Assembly: GCA_051530055.1 (NCBI GenBank)
Contig: CM121341.1
Location: 17,028,784-17,092,783, forward strand
Direction of reading: 5' to 3'
DNA length: 64,000 bases
DNA from: Neoechinorhynchus agilis
Lineage: Eukaryota; Animalia; Acanthocephala
Shown here: positions 24,890 through 45,241 of the stretch, piece by piece
How the letters are laid out: the number at the start of each line of letters is the position of its first letter
Numbering within the stretch: the first letter of the stretch is position 1
Program-made: the position numbers and the translations under genes
Notes under the pieces: model-generated
The model's input: only the letters and a program-made list of their open reading frames with translations
Told to the model about the DNA's origin: nothing
Databases searched by the model: none

Positions 24890-29099
<4,210 letters not shown>

Positions 29100-29965: not shown

Positions 29966-31017
29966 CTGAAGTGAAATGAACTTTTTAGACCGCGGAAAAG
30001 ATTCATTCTTATAGGGATTCTCAAATGATGTCAATCTTAGGAAGAAGAATTATTATGTGAAAGGTCAACAAACCTATAAGAGGCACTTTACTTCTTTTCT
30101 GAACAATCTTCTGTCTCGTACTCTTCGTCTAAATCTCTCAGACGATCTTCGTTCAACATCAGATATCCCGTGTTCTATAGACCGTTTAAGCGTAAGAGAA
30201 TTTATCGAGGAAGCTACATCTACCAGCACAAATTCAAGTTTAACGATTGACCCAAACTTAATTACCTATTCCACGTTTATTGAAGGCGATTAAACCACAG
30301 CTTCAGATAAAGAGTTCATATTTGCAGAATGTTAAGGGTTTACTTAATTCTCTGATTGCGAGATGCAATGACTTAAATAGTGGTCGAGTCATGTCTTTTT
30401 ATTTTGTCTCGCACCATACGAACGTTGTCAATGAGGTAGCGGCATGAGCACTCGAGAAAAGGTTGAATGAGAACGAAGAGGACTTAAATATATTCGGAAT
30501 GCTACCGACGGACGTGAATGGACTCACTTTCGATATAACGACCGACGTTATAGACAAATCCGTCGACTGTAATGGGAAACAGCTTTGCTACCGTCTTGGC
30601 ATTGATTTTCCTCGATGATTTGGAAATGCAGTACAAATTCTCGCATGTAACGCCGAGCCAAATTTATCTCCATTATGTGGATGATGTGTTGTTCACTTGC
30701 AGCGAGGATTGTGAGGTCGACGACAATGAAAGGAGGTTGAATTCGATGGATCCTATTGAAGGGAATAAGGTGACGCGAGACAAACCGTCGGATTATCTAC
30801 CATCTCTCAATTTGTACTTCAAAGTTAATGACATCACTGATTTCAGCTGGTTTCGCAAACCATGGCGATAGACAGGGTGAACGAAATTTTCGCGGATAAT
30901 GGATATACACATAACGATATCATGCGATCCCAGCAGCGGTGTGAAAGAGGTGAAACGAAAAGATGATCGTTCACACAATCGATATGGAGGAAACCCGATT
31001 CTCAAGATAAAAATATA

Positions 31018-31737
31018 TTCTGTGTCTTTAAGTGTAGTCTTTTCACGGCTGATAATTTTTCCTTGAGTACACAGCCCACCGATCTGGGCCAGGGAAGCGC
31101 TTAAAATCACTTAATACCCTGAACCATACGGTTATAAGTTGGTACATCCCTCTGGGTTCTCAGATACCTCCAGGAGGCGCCGTAGTTGTGCCTATCTCTC
31201 TTCATCGACCTATCTCTAGGGTCGACCTCTCGTCGTCGTCGACCGTCATCCTCCGGATCCGTCATCCAGTCCGGCCGGATCCGGCATCCAAATTCACTTC
31301 CGGATCCATCATCCACTTCAATTCCCGATCCGTCATTCATCCACTCCAAATTCCGGATCCATCATCCACTTTAAATTAAGGTGATCACGAGGACCCAGAG
31401 GTACATGGTTCATCTTCTTTATCAAAATAAGACGTGTAATTATTATGCGGTCAGGTGGACTAAAGTTCCTGATCCCAGTTTTGGTCGAAAAGTTCGAATC
31501 CGTTACCTCTGATGACGCACATCCAAATGGGACGAAATACCGATGAAGGGAGGAAACTCACTGATGAGTCCCGCCTTCCTGAGGTATATTAAGATCCGAA
31601 GGGACTTAAAACTCATAAACGTGTGCTTCAGGGTATTAAGTGATTCAAGCGCTTTCCTGATACAAGATATCGGTGGACTGTGCCCAAGGAATAATTATCA
31701 GTCGTGAAAAAAACCACACTTAAAAACACAGAATAAA
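31018..31737. repeat. ~165-bp inverted repeat with a ~390-bp spacer inside the Penelope-like remnant
   Basis: 31018-31180 aligns as the reverse complement of 31572-31737 (for example CACTTAATACCCTGAA / TTCAGGGTATTAAGTG). The spacer holds TCCGGATCCATCATCCA-type short repeats. Confidence 0.8.
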
Positions 31738-32142
31738 AGTCACCGGCTAGCCAGAGTTCAAAAAATAAAAATATATCAGTAAAAAATTCACTAGCCGCCT
31801 ACAATTCGGCGAATCCTCACGAGAACTAGACATCATGAAACGCTCTCCAACATTGTGTTTGATGTGTACTCATGGACCAGGGAAGACCGTGGACACAAAT
31901 GGCAGACAAGATTCGATTTACACTCGATGCTTCGTGGTCTACGAGATGACCATCAAACGATGTTTGGCCGATAACAATCGCACGGTCATCCATAGGCAAG
32001 CAAAAATGAGAAGCCTTTGTGTCAACGTTTGACGGAATACATTCGCTATGCAATGAATCCGGACGCAAAATCATCGCCACACCATGAGAAAAACACTACT
32101 CATAGTGCCACAGCGACTGAGAAGTAAAACTCTACAGACGAG

Positions 32143-32183
32143 TTCCTGAGGAAGCTGTAGGACGGCTAAAGCTTGAAAATAAA
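32143..32183 (+). ncRNA. Degenerate hammerhead at the 3' end of the Penelope-like element
   Basis: TTC CTGAGGA AGCTGT AGG ACGGC T AAA GC T T GAA AATAAA. Stem I is TTC/GAA and stem III is the palindrome AGCT, but core G12 is replaced by T. Confidence 0.5.
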
Positions 32184-32239
32184 GATTTTCTCTGGTCAAT
32201 TTAAAAACCAAACTTGAAAAAATTATCAGCTAATTGAAA

Positions 32240-35200
32240 TGTATATTTAGGAATCAGTAATTAAAAATCATTAATTAAAAATCACAGACTTCTTTAAAGC
32301 AATTTGAACGTAAAGAAAATCTTATGGAACCACAAAGATAACAACCCATCTAAAACGAAAAAATCGTCTTTTTCTACCATAGATGTTGTCTATCTTCAGC
32401 GCTGTTAAGCATCGGCGTCAGGTTCCTACGTTGAAACCAGCAAATATCCTAATCTCATTCTTAGTTGATCGAGCAAAACAAAAGTGAGAATGGTATGCGA
32501 TGCCAGTCTCAGAAATGCAGGAACCAATTATCAGACAAATAATTCGTCTATTTTAAATGTATATTTAAAAATCATTAATAATTTCTATGTAAAGAAAACT
32601 CCTAAGGAACCACAAAGATAACAACCCATCCAAAACGACGTGTGTATGGTATGCGATGCCAGTCTCAGAAATGTAGGAACCAATTATGAGACAAATAATT
32701 CGTCTATTTTAAATTTATATTTAAGAATCAGTAATAATTTCTATGTAAAGAAAAATCTTATGGAACCACAAAGATAACAACCCATCTAAAACGAACAAAT
32801 CGTCTTTTTCTACCATAAATTTCTACCGTTATCTATCTTCCGCGCTCTTAAGCTTCGGCGTCAGGTTCCTTCTTTGAAACCGGCAAATATCCTAATCTCA
32901 TTCTTAGTTGATCTAGGAAAATAAACGTGAGAATGATATGCGATGCCAGTCTCAGAAATCCAGGAACCAATTATGAGACAAATAATTCGACTATTTTAAA
33001 TTTATATTTAAGAATCAGTAATAATTTCTAGGTAAAGAAAAATCTTATGGAACCACAAAGATAACAACCCATCTAAAACGAACAAATCGTCTTTTTCTAC
33101 CATAAATTTCTACCGTTATCTATCTTCAGCGCTCTTAAGCCTCGGCGTCAGGTTCCTTCTTTGAAACCGGCAAATATCCTAATCTCATTCTTAGTTGATC
33201 TAGGAAAATAAACGTGAGAATGATATGCGATGCCAGTCTCAGAAATCCAGGAACCAATTATGAGACAAATAATTCGACTATTTTAAATTTATATTTAAGA
33301 ATCAGTAATAATTTCTAGGTAAAGAAAAATCTTATGGAACCACAAAGATAACAACCCATCTAAAACGAACAAATCGTCTTTTTCTACCATAAATTTCTAC
33401 CGTTATCTATCCTCAGCGCTCTTAAGCCTCGGCGTAAGGTTCCTTCTTCGAAACCGGCAAATATCCTAATCTCATTCTTAGTTGATCCAGGAAAATAAAA
33501 GTGAGAATGGTATGCGATGCCAGTCTCAGAAATGCAGGAAATATTTATCAGACTAATAATTCGTCTATTTTAAATGTATATTTAAAAATCATTAATAATT
33601 TCTAAGTAAAGAAAACTCTTAAGGGACCACAAAGATAACAATCCATCCAAAACGACGTGTGTATGGTATGCGATGCCAGTCTCAGAAATGTAGGAACCAA
33701 TTATCAGACAAATAATTCGTCTATTTTTTTTATTATATTTAAGAATCAGTAATAATTTCTAGGTAAAGAAAAATCTTATGGAACCACAAAGATAACAACC
33801 CATCTAAAACGAAAAAATCGTCTTTTTCTACCATAAATTTCTACCGTTGTCTATCTTCAGCGCTCTTAAGCCTCGGCGTCAGGTTCCTTCTTTGAAACCG
33901 GCAAATATCCTAATCTCATTCTTAGTTGATCCAGGAAAATAAACGTGAGAATGATATGCGATGCCAGTCTCAGAAATGCAGGAAATATTTATCAGACTAA
34001 TAATTCGTCTATTTTAAATGTATATTTAAAAATCACTAATAATTTCTAAGTAAAGAAAACTCTTAAGGGACCACAAAGATAACAACCCATCCAAAACGAC
34101 GTGTGTATGGTATGCGATGCCAGTCTCAGAAATGTAGGAACCAATTATCTGACAAATAATTCGTCTATTTTAAAATTATATTTAAGAATCAGTAATAATT
34201 TCTAGGTAAAGAAAAATCTTATGGAACCACAAAGATAACAACCCATCTAAAACGAAAAAATCGTCTTTTTCTACCATAAATTTCTACCGTTGTCTATCTT
34301 CGGTGCTCTTATGCCTCGGCGTAAAGTTCCTTCTTTGAAACCGGCAAATATCCTAATCTCATTCTTAGTTGATCCAGGAAAATAAAAGTGAGAATGGTAT
34401 GCGATGCCAGTCTCAGAATTGCAGGAACCAACTATCAGACAAATAATTCGTCTATTTTAAATGTATATTTAAAAATCATTAATAATTTCTATGTAAAGAA
34501 AACTCTTAAGGGACCACAAAGATAACAACCCATCCAAAACGACGTGTGTATGGTATGCGATGCCAGTCTCAGAAATGTAGGAACCAATTATCTGACAAAT
34601 AATTCGTCTATTTTAAAATTATATTTAATAATCAGTAATAATTTCTAGGTAAAGAAAAATCTTATGGAACCACAAAGATAACAACCCATCTAAAACGAAA
34701 AAATCGTCTTTTTCTACCATAAATTTCTACCGTTGTCTATCTTCAGCGCTCTTAAGCCTCGGCGTCAGGTTCCTTCTTTGAAACCGGCAAATATCCTAAT
34801 CTCATTCTTAGTTGATCCAGGAAAATAAACGTGAGAATGATATGCGATGCCTGTCTCAGAAATCCAGGAACCAATTATGAGACAAATAATTCGACTATTA
34901 AAATTTATATTTAAGAATCAGTAATAATTTCTATGTAAAGAAAAATCTTATGGAACCACAAAGATAACAACAACCCATCTAAAACGAACAAATCGTCTTT
35001 TTCTACCGTAAATTTCTACCGTTATCTATCTTCCGCGCTCTTAAGCCTCGGCGTCAGGTTCCTTCTTTGAAACCGGCAAATATCCTAATCTCATTCTTAG
35101 TTGATCCAGGAAAATAAACGTGAGAATGATATGCGATGCCAGTCTCAGAAATCCAGGAACCAATTATGAGACAAATAATTCGACTATTAAAATTTATATT

Positions 35201-35901
35201 TAAGAATCAGTAATAATTTCTATGTAAAGAAAAATCTTATGGAACCACAAAGATAACAACAACCCATCTAAAACGAACAAATCGTCTTTTTCACCGTAAA
35301 TTTCTACCGTTATCTATCTTCCGCGCTCTTAAGCCCGGCGTCAGGTTCCTTCTTTGAAACCGGCAAATATCCTAATCTCATTCTTAGTTGATCTAGGAAA
35401 ATAAACGTGAGAATGATATGCGATGCCAGTCTCAGAAATCAGGAACCAATTATGAGACAAATAATTCGACTATTAAAATTTATATTTAAGAATCAGTAAT
35501 AATTTCTATGTAAAGAAAATCTTATGGAACCACAAAGATAACAACAACCCATCTAAAACGAACAAATCGTCTTTTTCTACCGTAAATTTCTACCGTTATC
35601 TATCTTCGCGCTCTTAAGCCTCGCGTCAGGTTCCTTCTTTGAAACCGGCAAATATCCTAATCTCATTCTTAGTTGATCTAGGAAAATAAACGTGAGAATG
35701 ATATGCGATGCCAGTCTCAGAAATCCAGGAACCAATTATGAGACAAATAATTCGACTATTAAAATTTATATTTAAGAATCAGTAATAATTTCTATGTAAA
35801 GAAAAATCTTAAGGAACCACAGAGATAACAACAACCCATCTAAAACGAAAAAATCGTCTTTTTCTACCATAAATTTCTACCGTTGTCTATCTTCAGCGCT
35901 C
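32240..35901 (-). repeat. Satellite derived from the dicarboxylate-carrier 3' end (about 10 units of ~287 bp plus 4 of ~156 bp)
   Basis: The anchor CGATGCC(A/T)GTCTCAG recurs 14 times. Long units translate on the minus strand as VPGFLRLASHIILTFIFLDQLRMRLGYLPVSKKEPDAEA* followed by 3' UTR. Confidence 0.95.
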
Positions 35902-36871
35902 TTAAGCCTCGGCGTCAGGTTCCTTTGAAACCGGCAAATATCCTAATCTCATTCTTAGTTGTTCCAGGAAAATAAATGTGAGAATGGTATGCGGTGCCAG
36001 TCTCAGAAAGGCAGGAACGAACCCTTTGAAGAATCCCGCAGGTCCGGCTTTGGCAATATCTTTTACACATGAGAGTACTCCGTGTTTATAATATCCAGGT
36101 GGAGCGTTCATTAATCTCGTCTTCGTTACATCGATTGGCATCGTCATCGCAGTTGCAACTGTGCCAGCCAAGGAACTCGCTGTGAAGTGAGTCGCCAGAT
36201 TGTCATTGAAGTATCCGGAACTCAGTAAGACTTGTTTGATTTGTTCATAAAACGCGAGCTGGCCGATGTTCATTGCACCACCTCTTACGCTCGCGGTTAA
36301 TCCTCCTCCAAACATTCTTTTGACTCCTTCTTCTCTATACACTCTCAAAAGTCCGTCAAGAGCGTGCTTATATTGACGACGCTGTTCAACCGGAAGCTTT
36401 ATATCGTTCTGCATTCGAACATTTACCAGATCCGCCGGTGTCCCAACAAAACCGCCACAAAATCCAGCCGATCCAGCCAAGACTACTTTTTCGACGAAGC
36501 TCAGTTTGATTGCGCCGTTGGAATCTGGCTTCTTTGATGAACGTACGACTTCATATATTCCGAATCGAGTGGTCGAATATGTCAATTGTCGACATATAGA
36601 CGCACTTAGGCCATTGTAAAGACCCAACATCCCAGCATCTTTGAGAACTTGTTTCCCAGTGCCTATAATTTCATCGAGATTATAGTTTTTAAATGGAAAA
36701 CACACCAAATAATCCGAATTGAACCGTTTGTTGGGTTTGTAGCTGAACTTTAAGGAGATCAAGTGGATGGGTAAAGCAGACAGCCATGGAACCTGCCACC
36801 CCTCCAAAATACCATCGAGAATTCCGATTTTTGTTCACACGACCAAGGGCAATCACATTTGTAACTGACAT
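35902..36871 (-). CDS. SLC25A10: Mitochondrial dicarboxylate carrier, paralog A (2 exons, 308 aa)
   Basis: Exon 1 is 36871-36706 (SRWYFGGVAGSMAVCFTHPLDLLKVQLQTQQ), then a 43-nt GT-AG intron (36705-36663), then exon 2 at 36662-35902. RQLTYSTTRFGIYE, GTPADLVNVRMQND, YKHALDGL and T.PIDVTKTR are DIC signatures. Confidence 0.93.
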
Positions 36872-37612
36872 ATTGCAAGCTATTTTCCGACTGATTGGAC
36901 TTCGTCGTTTCTTATTTTAGTATAAAAAGAAGAGTTGAATTTCCGCTTGCGCTAAAAATAAAACACTTATAATATAATTGATTTTGGGCAAAGTTTTTAT
37001 TTTTCGATCATCACCTAAGCGTCTTACACAGACGATCTTAGCAGGAATATTTTTACGTAGATTCTCAGGCAAGCTGATTTTTGTGACATTGTCTTCTCGA
37101 TGAGTTTACCTTCTTTTCGACGAATGTCGGAAAATAATGCTTTCTTCAGCTTTTCTATAGAAAAAGTGCTACTACATGCATTTATTTCGAGATTAAAAGA
37201 AATTGTTTGAGAATAGAATACAATGAAGATAAATTATTAAAATAGCAAAGAGATTAAAATTAATCGAACATCCTATTTAATGATAGGAGCTGTGCGTTTA
37301 TGGGCATAATTTGAGCAAAATAGCGATTACTAACTGAAAGGAATAATATATATTTACAGTGTTCCAAAACTTTGGTTTTAAAGAAAAGAGTATTTAATAT
37401 GCCTGATTCTTTTTGAATACGATATTAAACGTCAGTATAAAATTTTAGACCTAAAATATTTCCCGGAAATGGACGTGAGCATGTTCGTTAATAGAATTAA
37501 TGATCAATTTTATTAGGCTATTCTATATCCTTTCAAAAGTTGAATTTCCTTTTTGATTTTTTACAAGTCCCTGGGAATTTCTTTTAGAAAAGTAGAATAT
37601 AAATTCTTTAGA

Positions 37613-38060
37613 TAATTTTGGTGAACATACTCCCGGTCATAACCTATTTGATTTTAATTTATTGGAAATATTTCGAGAGGTAACATCGCCTCATTAGTCA
37701 TCTAAAAATGAGTTTTACACATTAAGGTTTTAAGCTCGAGTGCGCGGGATCCTCAAACCTGAAGTTCGGGGACCAATTATCCGCTCGAACCCCCTGCGCT
37801 GTACTACGTTTTTTCCATGATTTTATTATTGATTTTTAACACGTCACTGGCTGAAGGTTTCAATTTAAAATTAGCTTTATTTCCTTTCACTGTGTTGGAC
37901 GTAGCGATGTGTAAAGCCTCCAAAACAAGCCGCCTTTTTAAGATTTGTTATGTGTAAAACTCATTTTTAGATGACTGATGAGGCGAGGTTACCTCGCGAA
38001 ATATTTCCAATAAATCAAAATTAAATAGGTTGCGACCGGGATTATGTTTACCAAAATTAC
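37613..38060. mobile_element. Foldback-like element: ~110-bp hammerhead-bearing inverted repeats enclosing one diverged 189-bp monomer
   Basis: 37613-37721 versus the reverse complement of 37951-38060 (5 mismatches over the inner 81 bp). The interior (37745-37915) retains GCGGGATC, CCGCTCG.ACC, TTTTTAACACGTC..TGG and TGTTGGACG.AGCGATGTGTAAA of the 189-bp unit. Confidence 0.82.
37971..38014 (+). ncRNA. Minimal type I hammerhead ribozyme motif
   Basis: ATGA CTGATGA G GCGAGG TTA CCTCGC GAAA TA T T TCC AATAAA. The core is intact, stem II is a perfect 6 bp, stem III is ATAT, and stem I is only 2 bp. Confidence 0.6.
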
Positions 38061-38906
38061 ACTTTGACTTATCCGAAGGATTTTCTACCGATGATAATTT
38101 ATTTTCGTTCTACAAATCCAAAACGCGTAGTTTGCATACTCTAAGAAAAACTTTTATCAACAATTTGTACTCGGGTAGATAATCACAATAAAAATAAGTC
38201 TTCGATGAAATCGTGTTGAAGAAAGCGAGGTTTTATTTTTGAGGAATGTGAGTGAGCATTTTGTCAAGATTGAAAAATATAAAAGTACTTGTTTAATCGA
38301 TTTTATTCCTTGAATGTTTGCAAAGTGTAAATTTACACAAAGTTAATGCTAAATGGCCATTTGCCGTTGCACATTATTTTGTAGTCCAAGTTAATACTCA
38401 TAAAGACTTTAAAGATTTCGCTAAGGTAAAAATTTCTATTTTGCCTTGTTTAAATGATAGATATTTTAATTGAAAGTCTAAAATATTTGTATTTTAAGTT
38501 TTAACATGGATGTTCGTTTCAAGTGACTTACCAAAAAAGTATTTGAAAAGTTGCGTAGATTTAAGACGCTTTTTCAGCGCGTTTTTCCCTGTTTTGCTGA
38601 TTCACCAACTATACAAGTATTGCGTTTTTCCTTAGGGTTGACATTTTTAAGTCTAACACCGTTACGCGTAGTAATGGCAAACATTCTTGTCTTTTATATC
38701 ATTAAATAACAGTAGGTCAAAACGGTATTTAATTAACTATTAAGACGGATAAGTCGTTTAAAACTTTTTGGGTCTAGAATTTAAGTATGGATTTTATTTC
38801 GCCTTTTTGAAGGAAATCTTGATGTCTGAAAAGTTAGTCTATACGAAGTTTTACTTTAAATCATCTTCGCTAACACACAAAAATCTATATAACTACATTA
38901 ATACAC

Positions 38907-39297
38907 TCACTGAAAGTGGACGCAAATCGTGCCACCGTTATGTATTCCCAATCGCTCAAATGTTTCGTTCGAATAATCGTCAATCCTCATATCACCATAA
39001 AATAACAACAAACATCGAGGCTCAACTTTAAAACGTTCGGCTAATGTTTCAAGCAAATCTTTAATCAGTGGGACGCCTTTAGTCGTTAAAACAATGGACC
39101 ACAGCTCTTCTCCACAAGCGACGCTTATAATTTGACGGCGAATATAAACTACTTCTTTAGAATCCTTATAGTTATCTTTTGCTTCAATCAAAGAATCGGG
39201 CTTATCCTTTAAGCAAAAGCTGCTTTTGCACTCGCCAATGGTGTACTTTGAAGGATGCCCGTTCTCTTCGAACGAATCCTTCGAATTTACTTTTAAT
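38907..39297 (-). CDS. Probable terminal exon encoding a ubiquitin/SUMO-like domain
   Basis: DLLETLAERFKVEPRCLLLFYGDMRIDDYSNETFERLGIHNGGTICVHFQ* has the beta-grasp pattern (helix, L.F.G, T...LGI..G..I.V). The frame is open upstream to 39314 without an ATG. Confidence 0.5.
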
Positions 39298-39600
39298 CTA
39301 ATGATATAACGATTTCAGTTCGAAGTTGCTATGGTGATTTCAGATGTGGAAATACCTTCATTCTCAAACGTAAACGTAAATGTTGATGATGGCGTTTAGT
39401 GGTAAGCAATATCGAATGTCCAATTTTTCACTTCTAGTATATCTAAATTATTTGAGATTATCAAAAGTGTCCAAACTCTTGATTGAAAATGAGGTACGCT
39501 GGAGGTAATAAGTAGTTATTGTTAAACTGTCAATTCAATAAAACAATACATTTGCCTATAATAGAATTCGCGATGATGGATCATACCTCCAGAGTTCTCA

Positions 39601-40441
39601 GAAACCGGCAAATATCCTAATCTCATTCTTAGTTGTTCCAGGAAAATAAACGCGAGAATGGTATGTTATGCCAGTCTCAGAAATGTAGGAACCAATTATC
39701 AGACAAATAATTCGGCTATTAAAATTTATATTTAAGAATCAGTAATAATTTCTAAGTAAAGAAAAATCTTATGGAACCACAAAGATAACAAACAACCCAT
39801 CTAAAACGAACAAATCGTCTTTTTCTACCGTAAATTTCTACCGTTATCTATCTTCAGCGCTCTTAAGCCTCGGCGTCAGGTTCCTTCTTTGAAACCGGCA
39901 AATATCCTAATCTCATTCTTAGTTGATCTAGGAAAATAAACGTGAGAATGATATGCGATGCCAGTCTCAGAAATCCAGGAACCAATTATGAGACAAATAA
40001 TTCGACTATTAAAATTTATATTTAAGAATCAGTAATAATTTCTATGTAAAGAAAAATCTTATGGAACCACAAAGATAACAAACAACCCATCTAAAACGAA
40101 CAAATCGTCTTTTTCTACCGTAAATTTCTACCGTTATCTATCTTCCGCGCTCTTAAGCCTCGGCGTCAGGTTCCTTCTTTGAAACCGGCAAATATCCTAA
40201 TCTCATTCTTAGTTGATCTAGGAAAATAAACGTGAGAATGATATGCGATGCCAGTCTCAGAAATCCAGGAACCAATTATGAGACAAATAATTCGACTATT
40301 AAAATTTATATTTAAGAATCAGTAATAATTTCTATGTAAAGAAAAATCTTAAGGAACCACAGAGATAACAACAACCCATCTAAAACGAAAAAATCGTCTT
40401 TTTCTACCATAAATTTCTACCGTTGTCTATCTTCAGCGCTC
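39601..40441 (-). repeat. Second array (about 3 units) of the carrier-derived ~287-bp repeat
   Basis: Same unit as 32240-35901, directly downstream of paralog B. Confidence 0.95.
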
Positions 40442-41386
40442 TTAAGCCTCGGCGTCAGGTTCCTTTGAAACCGGCAAATATCCTAATCTCATTCTTAGTT
40501 GTTCCAGGAAAATAAATGTGAGAATGGTATGCGGTGCCAGTCTCAGAAAGGCAGGAACGAACCCTTTGAAGAATCCCGCAGGTCCGGCTTTGGCAATATC
40601 TTTTACACATGAGAGTACTCCGTGTTTATAATATCCAGGTGGAGCGTTCATTAATCTCGTCTTCGTTACATCGATTGGCATCGTCATCGCAGTTGCAACT
40701 GTGCCAGCCAAGGAACTCGCTGTGAAGTGAGTCGCCAGATTGTCATTGAAGTATCCGGAACTCAGTAAGACTTGTTTGATTTGTTCATAAAACGCGAGCT
40801 GGCCGATGTTCATTGCACCACCTCTTACGCTCGCGGTTAATCCTCCTCCAAACATTCTTTTGACTCCTTCTTCTCTATACACTCTCAAAAGTCCGTCAAG
40901 AGCGTGCTTATATTGACGACGCTGTTCAACCGGAAGCTTTATATCGTTCTGCATTCGAACGTTTACCAGATCCGCCGGTGTCCCAACGAATCCGCCACAA
41001 AATCCAGCCGATCCAGCCAAGACTACTTTTTCTGCAAAACTAAGAGCCATTAATTTTCCTCCTTCTGACTTTTTGGTTGCTCTTCCGACTTCATATATTC
41101 CGAATCTAGTCGTTGTGTAGGTCATTTGACGAAGAATCGCGGCGCTCAGACCTCTATAGATAGCCAAAGGACCGCCATCATGGACAAGTTTCTTGAACAT
41201 TCCAAACAAACCGAATTCAGCCTTTTGTTGGGTTTGGAGCTGGACTTTGAGAGTATCTAGCGGATGAGTGATGCATACTGCCATGCAACCGGCGGTTCCA
41301 CCAAAGTACCAACGAGATACTCGCTTCTTTTTAGGATCATCGATAACTGTTGAACTATCGGTAACTTGGACAGTATTAGTAGCCAT
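40442..41386 (-). CDS. SLC25A10: Mitochondrial dicarboxylate carrier, paralog B (intronless, 314 aa)
   Basis: Continuous ORF with SRWYFGGTAGCMAVCITHPLDTLKVQLQTQQ and RQMTYTTTRFGIYE. The C-terminal two thirds are identical in protein to paralog A. Confidence 0.95.
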   Translation of the reverse strand: MATNTVQVTDSSTVIDDPKKKRVSRWYFGGTAGCMAVCITHPLDTLKVQLQTQQKAEFGLFGMFKKLVHDGGPLAIYRGLSAAILRQMTYTTTRFGIYEVGRATKKSEGGKLMALSFAEKVVLAGSAGFCGGFVGTPADLVNVRMQNDIKLPVEQRRQYKHALDGLLRVYREEGVKRMFGGGLTASVRGGAMNIGQLAFYEQIKQVLLSSGYFNDNLATHFTASSLAGTVATAMTMPIDVTKTRLMNAPPGYYKHGVLSCVKDIAKAGPAGFFKGFVPAFLRLAPHTILTFIFLEQLRMRLGYLPVSKEPDAEA

Positions 41387-41719
41387 TTGTACTTATCTAG
41401 AATTCTTGAAGCAGTTTAAAAACGATACTGAATTGCTTTAATGTTGCAAACATAGAGAAGCAGTTCCATACTCAGTGCTGCGCCGAAGTATGATGTCTTC
41501 ATGCAGACATGAAACGTCGAGAATTTTTTGTCACTACGAGGTGTGCCTTACGGGAAGATTTATACATTAGTGCTCCTCATGTGGAACAATTGAACATTGG
41601 CATATGCGTGGCACACAGTTGAGCTACAAAATTGAAAAAACCCATTATGGATGGTATATTGCTGTATCTTGAAATGGTTATTACCGGTCCTTTTTAAATG
41701 GCGGAAAATTAAAAGAATT

Positions 41720-41890
41720 TTATTAATTTCGATATTTCGGATCAAGGTTGCTTGTGACACGAGTTCACATATTTTAAAAATTAATAAGAACCGTGATAAA
41801 CGCGTACAAGACTGTGCCGAAATATTGGAACCAATCAATTCTTTTAAATTTTCTGCCATAAACAAGCATGGGCAATTCAATCTTCAAATA
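41720..41890. mobile_element. Decayed inverted pair of the second hammerhead-like family
   Basis: The left arm TTATTAATTTCGATATTTCGG|ATCAAGGTTGCT equals the 57590 arm with stem II deleted. The right arm is CCGTGATAAA...TGTGCCGAAATATTGG, followed by the GCAATTCAATCTTCAAA tail shared with 56220 and 57740. Confidence 0.55.
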
Positions 41891-43269
41891 CACTACCAGT
41901 CACAAATAAGGGGAACACTAATACCGTAGTATCTTTTTTAAATAAAGAATCCTGTTGTGAATCAACTAGGGCTCACAATTCCCATAAATTCTATAGAATA
42001 CCAAAATACAGTAAGAAATCAATAAGTAGTCTTATTTTCGGTATGGACGTTAATACAATACGATGGATATAGCTGGTGAGAATACATCATTGATAGTAGG
42101 TATGTGTTTTTATTATGATTTACTATTGGCTTATATTAATAAATGTTGATGACAAACAATTTTTCGTCAATAAAACGTTAAATGCCAAAACAAAATTATA
42201 AGCATACTTCAAAAATGATAGTAGTTTAGAATATTATCAGCTTTTTTGGAAAGCATTTACATTGTCAAAAAGATTAAATAATGCATTAAAGCAGCATTAA
42301 TTCAAATTACCATTCTTTTCCGTAAAAGTAATTTGTCAAAGCACAAGAAAATTTCGACTTATCTATCTAAATCGAATTTACTTCAAAACGGACGTAGAAA
42401 ATTTTGATGGCAAGAGAACTCTCAAAAGTACATTTATAAAATGTATTGGCCAAGGGAACGAAAATCCGTTTTGCGTAACTATCACAGGCGGCCAAGAGGC
42501 CTAATTTGGTGTTTATAACGAAATATTTCAGATATCTAAACTTCGAAAAAAGTCGTGTTGAACCAAGAAACGAAAGACCGCCATTCAAATAAGCAGAAGC
42601 GTTTGTGGTCGTCATCGTTTCTCATGCGTCGACACTATTTACTCAGAATTTCACCGATTTCACAAACATCCACGCAGGCGTTTGCTAATTTGGCACGAAC
42701 GCATTTCTTAGACAGGGTTTAAACGATTTATGGTCTGAATGCAACAAAAAATTGCTCTTGCTAATACCTCGACTAAAATTATTTAGTCTAAAAATATAAC
42801 GTGAAATTTTCAATCGCAGATCCGTCGATTTATGTAAATTGTATATTTAATTTACATTTAAAACTATCAGATATTTGATACTAAAAGTTAGCTAACACTT
42901 TAGTAAACATTTATTTGACGATAATAAAGGCCAAAGATATCAAAGATTCAAGAATAGCCGTTCATTTCTATACCACTACACCAGTTTTCCCAAGCTCTTT
43001 TTTATCGCGGAACATTTAAAGGAATTTATTAAATCCGATATTTTGGCACAATCTCGTGCCTTTGAAGCTTCTAAAAAAATGATTTTGTATAGGTTTTCAG
43101 AACGTTACACGAAGAACAAATTTTTTTAGAGTAAATATTTTTAATAATTTTTTCTGCAATTTTTCTAAGCTATTCAAAAAACATGAAATCATTCACACCA
43201 CAATTTTAATTTGATTATCCCGAAAGATTTTATATCGATCATTAAAAGGCATCGTATTGCTAATTAATA

Positions 43270-43867: not shown

Positions 43868-44953
43868 CTATTTTATACTTTCGATTTCTACTGATGGACG
43901 ATCATTGATTCCCTTCAAATCGAGGATAGCTTCATAGTATTCGGTGATGTATCGATTGGCCATACGAACTTTAATAAGTGAGCATGCATCTGACGGATTC
44001 AAATCGTGGAATCTACAACTGTAAGTGTGGGATAAATGATCATAGGTCAGCATATTGTTTGCGTACGCGAACGTGAAATCACTTGGTTTTGTATCGATAA
44101 CGATTCGACGGATTCGTGGTCCAATAAGCACAAAGGATTGTTGCATTTTCGCCTTGTATATTCGTCTATACATGACTTGCATTAACGCCTCGATGCTGAC
44201 TACATAGAACCAACAAGTTTCTCGTGCATCGGCAGCGAAACTAGACAACACATCGGTACACACTTTCACATTGTCTTCCAAAGTGAACAATATATTATCA
44301 GCGTTTTTAAGGACACTCTCGGCTGTTTTAAAATCAGGAGGTTCTCCTTGATGCATTCGACGACCTAAAACCGTTCTCAAATGAACCCACATATTGGCGT
44401 AGGTTCGTGTTCCTTTCAATTCTCTAAGTTCGTTCATATCAGCTGGAATGTGATGGACCTCTTCTGACTCTTTTGCGTCCGCCACACATCCAGTCGGAAT
44501 CTTACCCGGATCTATAATTGAACACTCGTACTCGCTTTTTGAACCAATTTTGCACAATGCAAACTCGGCAGCTACATGTTTACCCGTAATAGTAATACAA
44601 AATGTCTGAGTAAAAATCAAAAACAAATCAATATCATCGCCATCTATTATACGATCAATAAGACTCTCACATATCTTCACATGCATCTCTTGAAGACTTA
44701 TTGTCTGATCTACAAAATCAATTGCTTGTCCTATTTGTTGACCCATCGAATTAATACCTGGATTGCTACGACGGTTCTCTTCGCGCCACTTCTTCGCTTT
44801 CGTTTCGTATTTCGCTCGTTCTTCGACACTAAGACTCTTAAATTGTCCACAAGAACAATCAATGGCTTCCTTTATTGTCATATTACCACCAATACGCCGA
44901 CGGTAGTCCAATGCGTAAAAATATAGAGCTGATCTTTGAGGTCTTTTAGGCAT
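43868..44953 (-). CDS. mael: Maelstrom (HMG box plus MAEL domain), intronless
   Basis: N-terminal HMG-like RSALYFYA.DY...FKSLS.EERAKYE..AK.W. The MAEL block is F..TFC....HVAAEFAL..IIDPG.IP.G..A.A..SE..H.IP, and the C-terminal CRFHD....ACSL.KV supplies the E-C-H-C zinc ligands. Confidence 0.85.
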   Translation of the reverse strand: MPKRPQRSALYFYALDYRRRIGGNMTIKEAIDCSCGQFKSLSVEERAKYETKAKKWREENRRSNPGINSMGQQIGQAIDFVDQTISLQEMHVKICESLIDRIIDGDDIDLFLIFTQTFCITITGKHVAAEFALCKIGSKSEYECSIIDPGKIPTGCVADAKESEEVHHIPADMNELRELKGTRTYANMWVHLRTVLGRRMHQGEPPDFKTAESVLKNADNILFTLEDNVKVCTDVLSSFAADARETCWFYVVSIEALMQVMYRRIYKAKMQQSFVLIGPRIRRIVIDTKPSDFTFAYANNMLTYDHLSHTYSCRFHDLNPSDACSLIKVRMANRYITEYYEAILDLKGINDRPSVEIESIK

Positions 44954-45241
44954 TTTCAATTATCTGAAAAACGAAAACATTTGATTAGCAAAAACATTTT
45001 TTCGTACTAAATAAACTTCACAGGTTTAAACAAGTTAAAAACTGTAGAAAAAACTACATCACAACAACAAAAAATTAAATCAAAGCGAATAAAATTCGAC
45101 GTTATAGAAAAAACATATCGGCTATATCTGAAAGAATTCTAAAAATAGAGCGTGTATTTAAATTTCGGCAAAATGCTTTAAATGGTCTTTAACTTTTTTG
45201 GAATTCATGTGTATAAAATTAAAGATTTTTTAGATACAAGG

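What the first reader, a model, noticed from the sequence alone, without database searches (positions are those of the whole stretch)
32240..35901. Satellite born from the last codons and 3' UTR of a protein-coding gene
Seen: the ~287-bp unit is the final ~110 coding nt, stop codon and ~175 nt of downstream sequence of the dicarboxylate carrier, repeated 14 times directly behind the gene. Units differ from the gene by shared changes (extra AAG codon, E>D, P>S, T>I), so they are homogenised with each other rather than with the adjacent gene. A ~156-bp deleted unit alternates with the long unit as a ~444-bp higher-order repeat at 33.5-34.8 kb. Inference: a gene-derived satellite that is already forming higher-order structure. 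It could supply a repetitive 3' UTR, alternative 3' ends or antisense small RNAs against the carrier mRNA.
Basis: partly seen in the sequence, partly recalled or inferred. Interest (0 to 1): 0.75.

Follow-up and report, generated by a model that had tools for sequence, protein, structure and literature searches.

The report
Repeat array from carrier gene end
In the thorny-headed worm Neoechinorhynchus agilis, the last 113 coding bases, the stop codon and 170 bases beyond of a mitochondrial dicarboxylate-carrier gene have been copied head to tail 14 times behind the gene, with about three more copies behind its neighbouring paralog; it is a clear and well-structured but probably functionless case of repeat DNA born from a gene end, and one of several such cases in this genome.

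Summary
A minus-strand dicarboxylate-carrier gene (gene A, stop at 35902-35904) is followed by 14 further units: 10 long (285-296 bp) and 4 short (156 bp). Each long unit holds 113 coding nt, the stop and 170 nt of flank. Short and long units form a 443-bp higher-order repeat. Nine of nine orthologues carry the gene-type residues, so the repeat arose from the gene.

New here:
- A second, intronless paralog (gene B, 40442-41386) carries the same repeat (2 full units and 1 partial).
- A and B are 100% identical over 796 bp spanning the gene/array junction, but only about 58% identical in protein over the first third. This points to recent gene conversion.
- The repeat occurs nowhere else in the 46-Mb assembly, and no third carrier gene holds the repeat-type codons.
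- The coding and flank parts of the units diverge equally (3.2% vs 3.6%), so the copies are dead.
- No RNA family or unusual fold was found.

The scan found the same kind of array before on other DNA of this genome. I verified the RPL5 case; the PGAP4 and FoxO cases were not tested.

The most likely reading is a neutral tandem duplication that is tolerated because the first copy keeps the gene intact, then grew by unequal exchange. The proposed 3' UTR and small-RNA roles remain untested.

The parts
36706..36871 (-). Gene A (dicarboxylate carrier), exon 1
   Evidence: ATG at 36871. Mito_carr hit at E 6e-07. The splice was read from the sequence and agrees with the 308-aa database protein P0002.
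36663..36705 (-). Gene A intron, 43 nt, GT..AG
   Evidence: Read. P0002 reads straight across it. Paralog B has no intron here.
35902..36662 (-). Gene A exon 2 with stop TAA at 35902-35904
   Evidence: ORF. Mito_carr, three stretches, E 1.2e-46. Exon 1 + exon 2 = 927 nt = 308 codons + stop, matching P0002.
35732..36017 (-). Founder unit A00: the gene's own last 113 coding nt, stop and 170-nt flank
   Evidence: It is 100% identical to B00.
34584..35731 (-). Long units A01-A04 (proximal subfamily). A01-A03 carry a GTT insertion shared with A00, B00, B01 and B02.
33254..34583 (-). Higher-order repeat zone: three short+long dimers (A05+A06, A07+A08, A09+A10), about 443 bp each
   Evidence: TRF period 443, 4.0 copies, 95%. 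Dimers are 95.5-96.6% identical to each other.
32680..33253 (-). Long units A11 and A12
   Evidence: 99% identical to each other.
32524..32679 (-). Short unit A13 (156 bp, carries the 131-bp internal deletion)
32228..32523 (-). Terminal unit A14: diverged (72-89% raw identity to other units, partly from the misaligned distal end), with premature stops and an insertion; it runs into unique flank
40442..41386 (-). Gene B: intronless dicarboxylate-carrier paralog, 314 aa
   Evidence: ORF. Mito_carr E 1.2e-57. Best named relatives are mitochondrial dicarboxylate carriers.
39601..40557 (-). Array B: founder unit B00 (40272-40557), B01 (39982-40271), B02 (39692-39981) and truncated relic B03 (39601-39691)
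   Evidence: TRF period 290, 3.3 copies, 95%.
35069..36492 (-). A-side of the A/B homogenised tract (B-side 39601-41032). The core with zero differences is A 35625-36420 = B 40164-40960.
   Evidence: BLAST gives 98.5% over 1432 bp. Column-by-column comparison.

Best explanation
The array is a local tandem repeat made by DNA-level duplication, and it most likely does nothing.

1. A roughly 286-bp stretch was duplicated in tandem. It started inside the last exon of a dicarboxylate-carrier gene and ended 170 nt beyond the stop.
2. The upstream copy keeps the complete reading frame, the stop and its own flank, so the gene stays intact and the event is tolerated.
3. The downstream copy is a dead exon fragment. 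It accumulated changes (extra AAG, P>S, E>D), was multiplied by unequal sister-chromatid exchange or replication slippage, and split into subfamilies.
4. One subfamily lost 131 bp. It was then co-amplified with a long unit as a 443-bp higher-order repeat.
5. Purifying selection holds only the gene's own copy.
6. The repeat also sits behind the neighbouring old paralog. A recent gene conversion or unequal exchange, spanning the gene/array junction, made the last two thirds of both genes and their first units identical.

Shown: anatomy, direction (gene to repeat), lack of coding constraint, restriction to two loci, the conversion tract.
Inferred: the molecular mechanism of duplication, neutrality, and which paralog first carried the array.
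For: - Structure and copy counts.
- The unit holds 113 coding nt + stop + 170 flank. The coding and flank parts of 11 non-gene long units diverge equally (3.2% vs 3.6%; segregating sites 15/119 vs 16/167).
- Two units are frameshifted, A14 and B03 have premature stops, and most variants change the amino acid.
- Nine of nine orthologues carry the gene-type P-H-T and E.
- All genome matches lie in the two adjacent loci. Only two carrier genes exist, both with gene-type codons.
- Dimers are 94-97% identical against 86-91% between short and long units.
- A vs B shows a sharp switch at 36492/41032, from about 60-76% identity to zero differences over 796 bp. Proteins are 58% identical over the first 112 aa and 100% over the last 196.
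- No Rfam family. Fold z-scores are -0.05 and -1.23.
- The same anatomy exists behind RPL5 in this genome: a 271-bp unit, at least 14.7 copies, 99% matches, starting about 12 codons before the stop. Gene-end arrays therefore recur here, as expected if only duplications that spare the reading frame survive.
Against: - No transcript, 3'-end or small-RNA data could be consulted, so lack of function is inferred and not shown.
- The gene's first flank has no canonical AATAAA. The only candidate signal is AATATAAA, 130 nt after the stop, and it is repeated in each long unit from A01 to A04 and A10 to A12. The true mRNA end is unknown and could lie in or beyond the array.
- Recurrence of gene-end arrays in one small genome could also point to a directed process rather than survivorship.
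- Copy number rests on one hybrid ONT/Illumina assembly of pooled worms.
Confidence: 0.8

Rival explanations
1. The array is part of the transcript and works in 3'-end formation. Each unit repeats the gene's own weak poly(A)/termination region. The array would then give alternative 3' ends or fail-safe termination before the convergent GFAT gene.
For: There is no canonical AATAAA in the gene's own flank. A variant AATATAAA lies 130 nt after the stop and recurs in A01-A04 and A10-A12, and AATATA is in all units. GFAT lies convergently about 3 kb beyond the array. Several gene ends in this genome are amplified.
Against: The motif's conservation is no more than the 95% unit identity predicts. In the RPL5 array the canonical AATAAA sits 22 nt after the stop, so that mRNA needs no array. 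The four short units lack 131 bp and yet are co-amplified. No transcript evidence was available.
Confidence: 0.08
2. The dead copies are a source of small RNAs (siRNA or piRNA) against the carrier mRNA, in the manner of gene-derived repeats that silence their parent gene.
For: Each long unit holds 113 nt that are about 94% identical to the carrier coding sequence. A Maelstrom homologue (piRNA-pathway component) lies at 43868-44959, so at least part of such a pathway exists. Convergent GFAT transcription could in principle give antisense RNA.
Against: No antisense promoter, hairpin or inverted arrangement was found; all units lie in the sense orientation. The fold is not unusual on either strand. 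The short units have lost most of the coding part. No small-RNA data were available.
Confidence: 0.04
3. Assembly artefact: the array, or its copy number and order, was created or inflated by the assembler.
For: The assembly is a hybrid MaSuRCA build from ONT R9.4 reads of about 50 pooled worms. Units A01-A02 show about six single-base deletions typical of unpolished consensus.
Against: - The units carry structured, subfamily-specific variants, a deletion derivative in a regular dimer pattern, and a diverged terminal unit that grades into unique flank. Artefactual expansion would give near-identical copies.
- A second, independent array sits behind the paralog.
- The 3.7-kb array is shorter than the 5-kb minimum read length used.
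Confidence: 0.05
4. RNA-mediated origin: the units are 5'-truncated reverse-transcribed copies of the carrier mRNA's 3' end, made by one of the retroelements (Penelope-like, RT debris) that are frequent nearby.
For: The unit ends about 40 nt after the candidate AATATAAA signal, roughly where an mRNA might end. RT-like debris and Penelope-type elements lie in the window.
Against: - There is no poly(A) tract or target-site duplication at any junction.
- The array is in phase and contiguous with the gene, and the last unit runs on into the original flank.
- In the parallel RPL5 array the unit extends about 200 nt beyond the AATAAA, so it is not an mRNA copy.
Confidence: 0.03

Closest known systems
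RPL5 3'-end tandem array in the same genome (G000:C1 about 1570000-1574000; scan note s1-303068)
   Same: The unit starts in the last codons, spans the stop and the downstream flank, lies directly behind an intact gene, and has a similar unit size (271 vs 287 bp) and copy number.
   Different: The RPL5 array is young (99% matches). In what I read it has no deletion subfamily or higher-order repeat and no second locus. It includes a canonical AATAAA. The carrier array is older (95%), is structured, and is shared with a paralog.
Classical satellite DNA with higher-order repeats (for example primate alpha satellite), as reviewed in PMC5615363 and PMC12692304
   Same: Head-to-tail monomers, subfamilies, co-amplified adjacent monomers forming a higher-order unit, less homogenised units at the array edge, and growth by unequal exchange.
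   Different: There are only about 18 units (about 4.6 kb) at two adjacent euchromatic loci, not a dispersed or heterochromatic high-copy family. The source is a protein-coding gene end, which is absent from the sources section I read (PMC12692304 section 4.1: TEs, rDNA spacers, micro/minisatellites, older satellites) and from the passages I retrieved from PMC5615363 (rDNA spacers, parts of TEs).
Gene-derived repeats that silence their parent gene (Drosophila Stellate / Suppressor of Stellate; from my own knowledge, not tested here)
   Same: Tandem copies of part of a protein-coding gene, homologous to its mRNA.
   Different: That system works through antisense transcription and piRNAs. Here all copies are in the sense orientation and no small-RNA evidence exists.
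Partial tandem gene duplication followed by interlocus gene conversion between tandem paralogs
   Same: The old paralogs show a sharp switch from divergent to identical sequence. Other conversion cases are reported in this genome (scan notes s1-037884, s1-038001, not tested here).
   Different: Here the converted tract runs across the gene end into a repeat array. The array itself may supply the homology or the break that started the event (inference).

Membership tests
Mitochondrial carrier family / dicarboxylate carrier (SLC25A10-like): genes A and B | Three Mito_carr repeats across a protein of about 300 aa | tested here: met
   PF00153 gives three stretches in gene B (E 1.2e-57) and three in gene A exon 2. 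Exon 1 adds the start of the first repeat.
Mitochondrial carrier family / dicarboxylate carrier (SLC25A10-like): genes A and B | Closest named relatives are dicarboxylate carriers rather than other carrier subfamilies | tested here: met
   The hit list is dominated by proteins named mitochondrial dicarboxylate carrier, at 55-62% identity over 90% or more of the query. Substrate specificity was not tested.
Satellite DNA (classical sense) | Head-to-tail tandem monomers with concerted variation | tested here: met
Satellite DNA (classical sense) | High copy number and long arrays, usually at many sites or in heterochromatin | tested here: not met
   About 18 units, about 4.6 kb in total, all within two adjacent loci of one contig. 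It is better called a local tandem array or a satellite 'seed'.
Higher-order repeat | Multimers are more alike than the monomer types they contain | tested here: met
   Dimers are 94-97% identical; short vs long monomers are 86-91%. TRF period 443 x 4.0.
Processed (retro-copied) pseudogene fragments | Poly(A) tail, target-site duplication, and a location away from the parent gene | tested here: not met
   No A-run at any junction. The units are contiguous and in phase with the parent gene.
Known structured RNA families | Match to an Rfam covariance model | tested here: not met
   No match within the array at E <= 1. The only hit in 31000-42000 is a chance-level lncRNA match outside it.
Functional alternative terminal exon array | Splice acceptor before each copy, a donor in the gene, and copies under coding constraint | tested here: not met
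   The unit starts inside an exon and no intron sits there. The copies show no coding constraint, and they carry frameshifts and stops.

The most novel reading that the evidence does not exclude
Gene 3' ends are preferred birthplaces of tandem arrays in this compact acanthocephalan genome: carrier, RPL5, and reportedly PGAP4. This would reflect a process tied to transcription termination and not survivorship alone. The arrays would then have consequences. Here the array would act as the break or homology source that keeps the 3' two thirds of two old carrier paralogs identical, and possibly as a stack of weak poly(A) sites.
Probability: 0.12. Interest if true: 0.6.

Novelty: new member of a known kind. 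Interest (0 to 1): 0.35.

Why it matters
How new satellite families start is usually inferred from old, large arrays whose source has been lost. Here the source, a conserved coding helix plus its flank, is still attached. That makes the direction of descent, the first junction, the first subfamily split, a deletion derivative, the first higher-order repeat and the jump to a second locus all readable in 4.6 kb. Together with the younger RPL5 array in the same genome, it offers a small age series for the birth of tandem repeats. It also shows a practical hazard: dead copies of a last exon can mislead gene prediction and read mapping around the carrier genes. By itself it does not change what is known about repeat evolution.

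Tried and rejected
- Rfam scan of 31000-42000 at E <= 1: nothing in the array.
- RNA folding of a long unit on both strands: z -0.05 and -1.23, not unusual.
- Search for a third carrier gene with repeat-type codons: none. The other carriers are at most 27% identical over long matches, 35% over one shorter stretch.
- Exact-pattern scan of metagenome contigs for a 32-nt unit motif: blank.
- Pfam on the 40-aa unit ORF and on the 94-aa ORF between the loci: no family.
- Microhomology at the founding junction: a shared TTC is possible, but the junction has since changed. Read by eye; inconclusive.
- Microhomology at the 131-bp deletion: only about 1 nt; not informative.
- Alternative-terminal-exon reading: rejected, because there is no intron at the unit start and no constraint on the copies.
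- Retro-copy reading: rejected, because there are no poly(A) tracts and the array is contiguous with the gene.
- The joined (spliced) protein of gene A was not built or searched. Its exons were searched separately by reference, and the database protein P0002 served as the spliced product.
- The large representative-protein search, structure prediction and atlas tools were not used, because the protein family was already clear.
Full report
**Where this is.** The window is G000:C1:17028784-17092783 of a 46-Mb assembly. The carrier protein of gene A equals the database protein P0002, named as a hypothetical protein of Neoechinorhynchus agilis on a 19,375,080-bp contig. That is the length of this contig. 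The organism is therefore a thorny-headed worm (Acanthocephala). Its published assembly is a MaSuRCA hybrid of ONT R9.4 reads from about 50 pooled worms, a little HiFi, and Illumina reads (PMC12690905).

- Tandem Repeats Finder reports periods of 286-287, 156 and 443 between 32490 and 36018, with 88-95% matches and scores up to 3133.
- A nine-base anchor motif occurs 15 times in register on the minus strand.
- The first occurrence lies inside the coding sequence of a minus-strand gene whose stop is at 35902-35904. The other 14 follow it.
- Cutting at the shared start gives the gene's own copy A00 (36017-35732) and nine long units of 285-289 bp (A01-04, A06, A08, A10-12).
- It also gives four short units of 156 bp (A05, A07, A09, A13) and a diverged terminal unit A14 (32523-32228) that runs into unique DNA.
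- In A00 the unit holds 113 coding nt, TAA and 170 nt of flank.
- The short units lack 131 bp, from about position 41 of the unit to 72 nt past the stop.

**The gene.**
- Gene A has exon 1 at 36871-36706, a 43-nt GT..AG intron at 36705-36663, and exon 2 at 36662-35902. I read this, and it agrees with the 308-aa P0002.
- I searched its exons separately by reference and left out the joined model. Both exons hit Mito_carr.
- The closest named relatives of the paralog are mitochondrial dicarboxylate carriers, at 55-62% identity.

**Direction of descent.** The copied coding part encodes the last transmembrane helix. In nine of nine orthologues (acanthocephalans, rotifers, a brachiopod, amphioxus) the residues are P-H-T and E, as in the gene. 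The repeats carry S, I (in some units) and D. The gene is the source and the repeat-type changes are derived.

**Which changes are shared.**
- Every non-gene unit covering these positions differs from the gene at one base of the second codon, the P codon (to S; B03 reads a stop), one synonymous site, the extra AAG and one flank site.
- E>D is in all units except the relic B03.
- T>I marks only one subfamily.
'Homogenised among themselves' is one reading. A first dead copy that mutated and was then amplified, with selection holding the gene copy, explains the same pattern.
- The gene copy's flank is a mosaic of variants found in different subfamilies.

**The copies are dead.**
- Among 11 long non-gene units the mean pairwise divergence is 3.2% in the coding part and 3.6% in the flank. 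Segregating sites number 15 of 119 and 16 of 167.
- A01 and A02 are frameshifted, A14 and B03 have premature stops, and most variants change the amino acid.
- No unit has an ATG.
- No Rfam family matches the array.
- A long unit folds no better than shuffles on either strand.

**Higher-order structure.** Short units are 95-99% alike but only 86-91% like long units over the shared part. Short+long dimers (or long+short, in the other register) are 94-97% alike, apart from the dimer that contains the decayed terminal unit. This is a true two-monomer higher-order repeat of 443 bp, present three times in a row and once more at the distal end.

**A second locus changes the history.**
- The unit matches only two places in the genome. 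One is this array. The other is window 39595-40557.
- There, an intronless 314-aa paralog (gene B, 41386-40442) is followed by its own founder unit B00, two long units and a truncated relic B03 that ends at 39601 against unrelated DNA.
- Genes A and B are old paralogs. Their first 112 residues are 58% identical and the DNA there is about 60-76% identical per 50-nt window.
- From 36492/41032 onward the two loci switch abruptly to near-identity. There are no differences at all over 796 bp (A 35625-36420, B 40164-40960), which spans the last 518 coding nt (519 with the final base of the stop), most of the stop codon, the first flank and the start of the next unit. Identity then decays through units 1-3.
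- This is the signature of a recent gene conversion or unequal exchange across the gene/array junction.
- Both arrays end in their own decayed unit, so each locus seems to have held repeats before that event.
- I cannot tell which paralog carried the array first. Gene B has the more conservative N-terminus: 77% vs 57% identity to the unnamed relative P0003. Gene A has the longer array, and its terminal unit grades into the original flank.
- No third carrier gene exists, so there is no 'gene version with repeat-type codons'.

**Surroundings.**
- Beyond the array's distal end lie short 24-29-bp repeats and RT-like debris.
- Further on is the 3' end of a convergent plus-strand gene with a SIS domain, which I read as the glutamine-fructose-6-phosphate aminotransferase.
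- Between the two carrier loci the scan notes a hammerhead-bounded retroelement. There is also a 94-aa ORF with no Pfam match.
- A Maelstrom homologue lies upstream of gene B.

**3'-end signals.**
- The gene's own flank has no AATAAA or ATTAAA.
- The only candidate is AATATAAA, starting 130 nt after the stop and about 40 nt before the unit's end. AATATA is present in every unit.
- Without transcript data I cannot say where the mRNA ends. That is the main gap in the neutral reading.

**Recurrence in this genome.**
- Earlier notes of this scan describe arrays built from the 3' ends of RPL5 and PGAP4 and from codons of a FoxO-like gene.
- I fetched the RPL5 locus and confirmed it. An intact 297-aa RPL5 ORF is followed by a 271-bp unit with at least 14.7 copies at 99% matches. 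The unit begins about 12 codons before the stop and includes the stop (mutated to AAA in the copies) and an AATAAA 22 nt after it.
- That unit runs about 200 nt past the poly(A) signal, so it is not an mRNA copy. This also argues against a retro-origin for the carrier array.
- I did not test the PGAP4 and FoxO cases.

**Most likely mechanism.**
- A DNA-level tandem duplication that begins in the last exon and ends beyond the stop leaves the upstream copy complete. In a gene-dense genome it is therefore one of the few positions where a duplication of a few hundred bases overlapping a gene is harmless.
- The dead copy then drifts and is multiplied by unequal exchange. A deletion derivative arises and is co-amplified. 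The repeats provide homology for exchange with the paralog.
- I rate this at 0.8.
- The rivals are a role in 3'-end formation (0.08), a small-RNA source (0.04), an assembly artefact (0.05) and a retro-copy origin (0.03). None has positive evidence here.

**Comparison with what is known.**
- The sources section of PMC12692304 lists transposable elements, rDNA spacers, micro/minisatellites and older satellites. The passages retrieved from PMC5615363 name rDNA spacers and parts of TEs, and state that any sequence could in theory seed a satellite.
- Protein-coding gene ends are not mentioned in the passages I read. Tandemly amplified gene fragments are known elsewhere (my own knowledge: Stellate/Su(Ste), Y-linked gene-fragment arrays).
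- This is a new member of a known kind. It is attractive because its source and early history are still legible, but it is not a new principle. It fails the copy-number and dispersal criterion of a classical satellite.

**Limits.**
- No reads or transcripts were available.
- About six single-base deletions in A01-A02, against B01/B02 and the other units, suggest residual consensus errors in the array.

Noticed in passing
window 35625-36420 and 40164-40960: The two carrier paralogs share 796 bp with no difference at all, and their proteins are 100% identical over the last 196 residues, while their first thirds are only 58% identical. This is a recent gene conversion. It was already flagged separately by the scan (s1-259464).
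   Followed up: yes
window 43868-44959 (-): A 363-aa ORF with an HMG box and a Maelstrom domain (Pfam E 5e-06 and 1e-07). It is a homologue of a piRNA-pathway component in an acanthocephalan.
   Followed up: partly
window 38907-39191 (-): A 94-aa ORF between the two carrier loci. By eye it looks like a ubiquitin-like domain, but it has no Pfam match. It may be an exon of an unannotated gene.
   Followed up: partly
window 35260-35624: Units A01-A02 have about six single-base deletions relative to B01/B02 and the other units, mostly in short homopolymers, and B01/B02 each carry one extra T. The deletions are probably ONT consensus errors that short reads could not polish inside the repeat.
   Followed up: partly
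window 27506-27901 (+): A long pure trinucleotide (TAT/ATT-type) microsatellite of about 350 bp, inside what seems to be an intron of the SIS-domain (GFAT-like) gene.
   Followed up: no
window 30572-30871 (+) and 31252-31377: An ORF fragment with a YVDD-type reverse-transcriptase motif but no Pfam hit, followed by a 24-29-bp tandem repeat. This is retroelement debris between GFAT and the array's distal end.
   Followed up: partly
L011 1-3975 (G000:C1:1570000-1573974): A 271-bp array directly behind an intact RPL5 gene, with at least 14.7 copies at 99% matches. It starts about 12 codons before the stop, and the stop is changed to AAA in the copies. It is a younger parallel to the carrier array.
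   Followed up: partly
window 39601-39691 (-): Relic unit B03 combines the start typical of the short-unit subfamily (TACA) with an undeleted body and the gene-type GAA codon. It may resemble the ancestor of the short units before their 131-bp deletion.
   Followed up: partly
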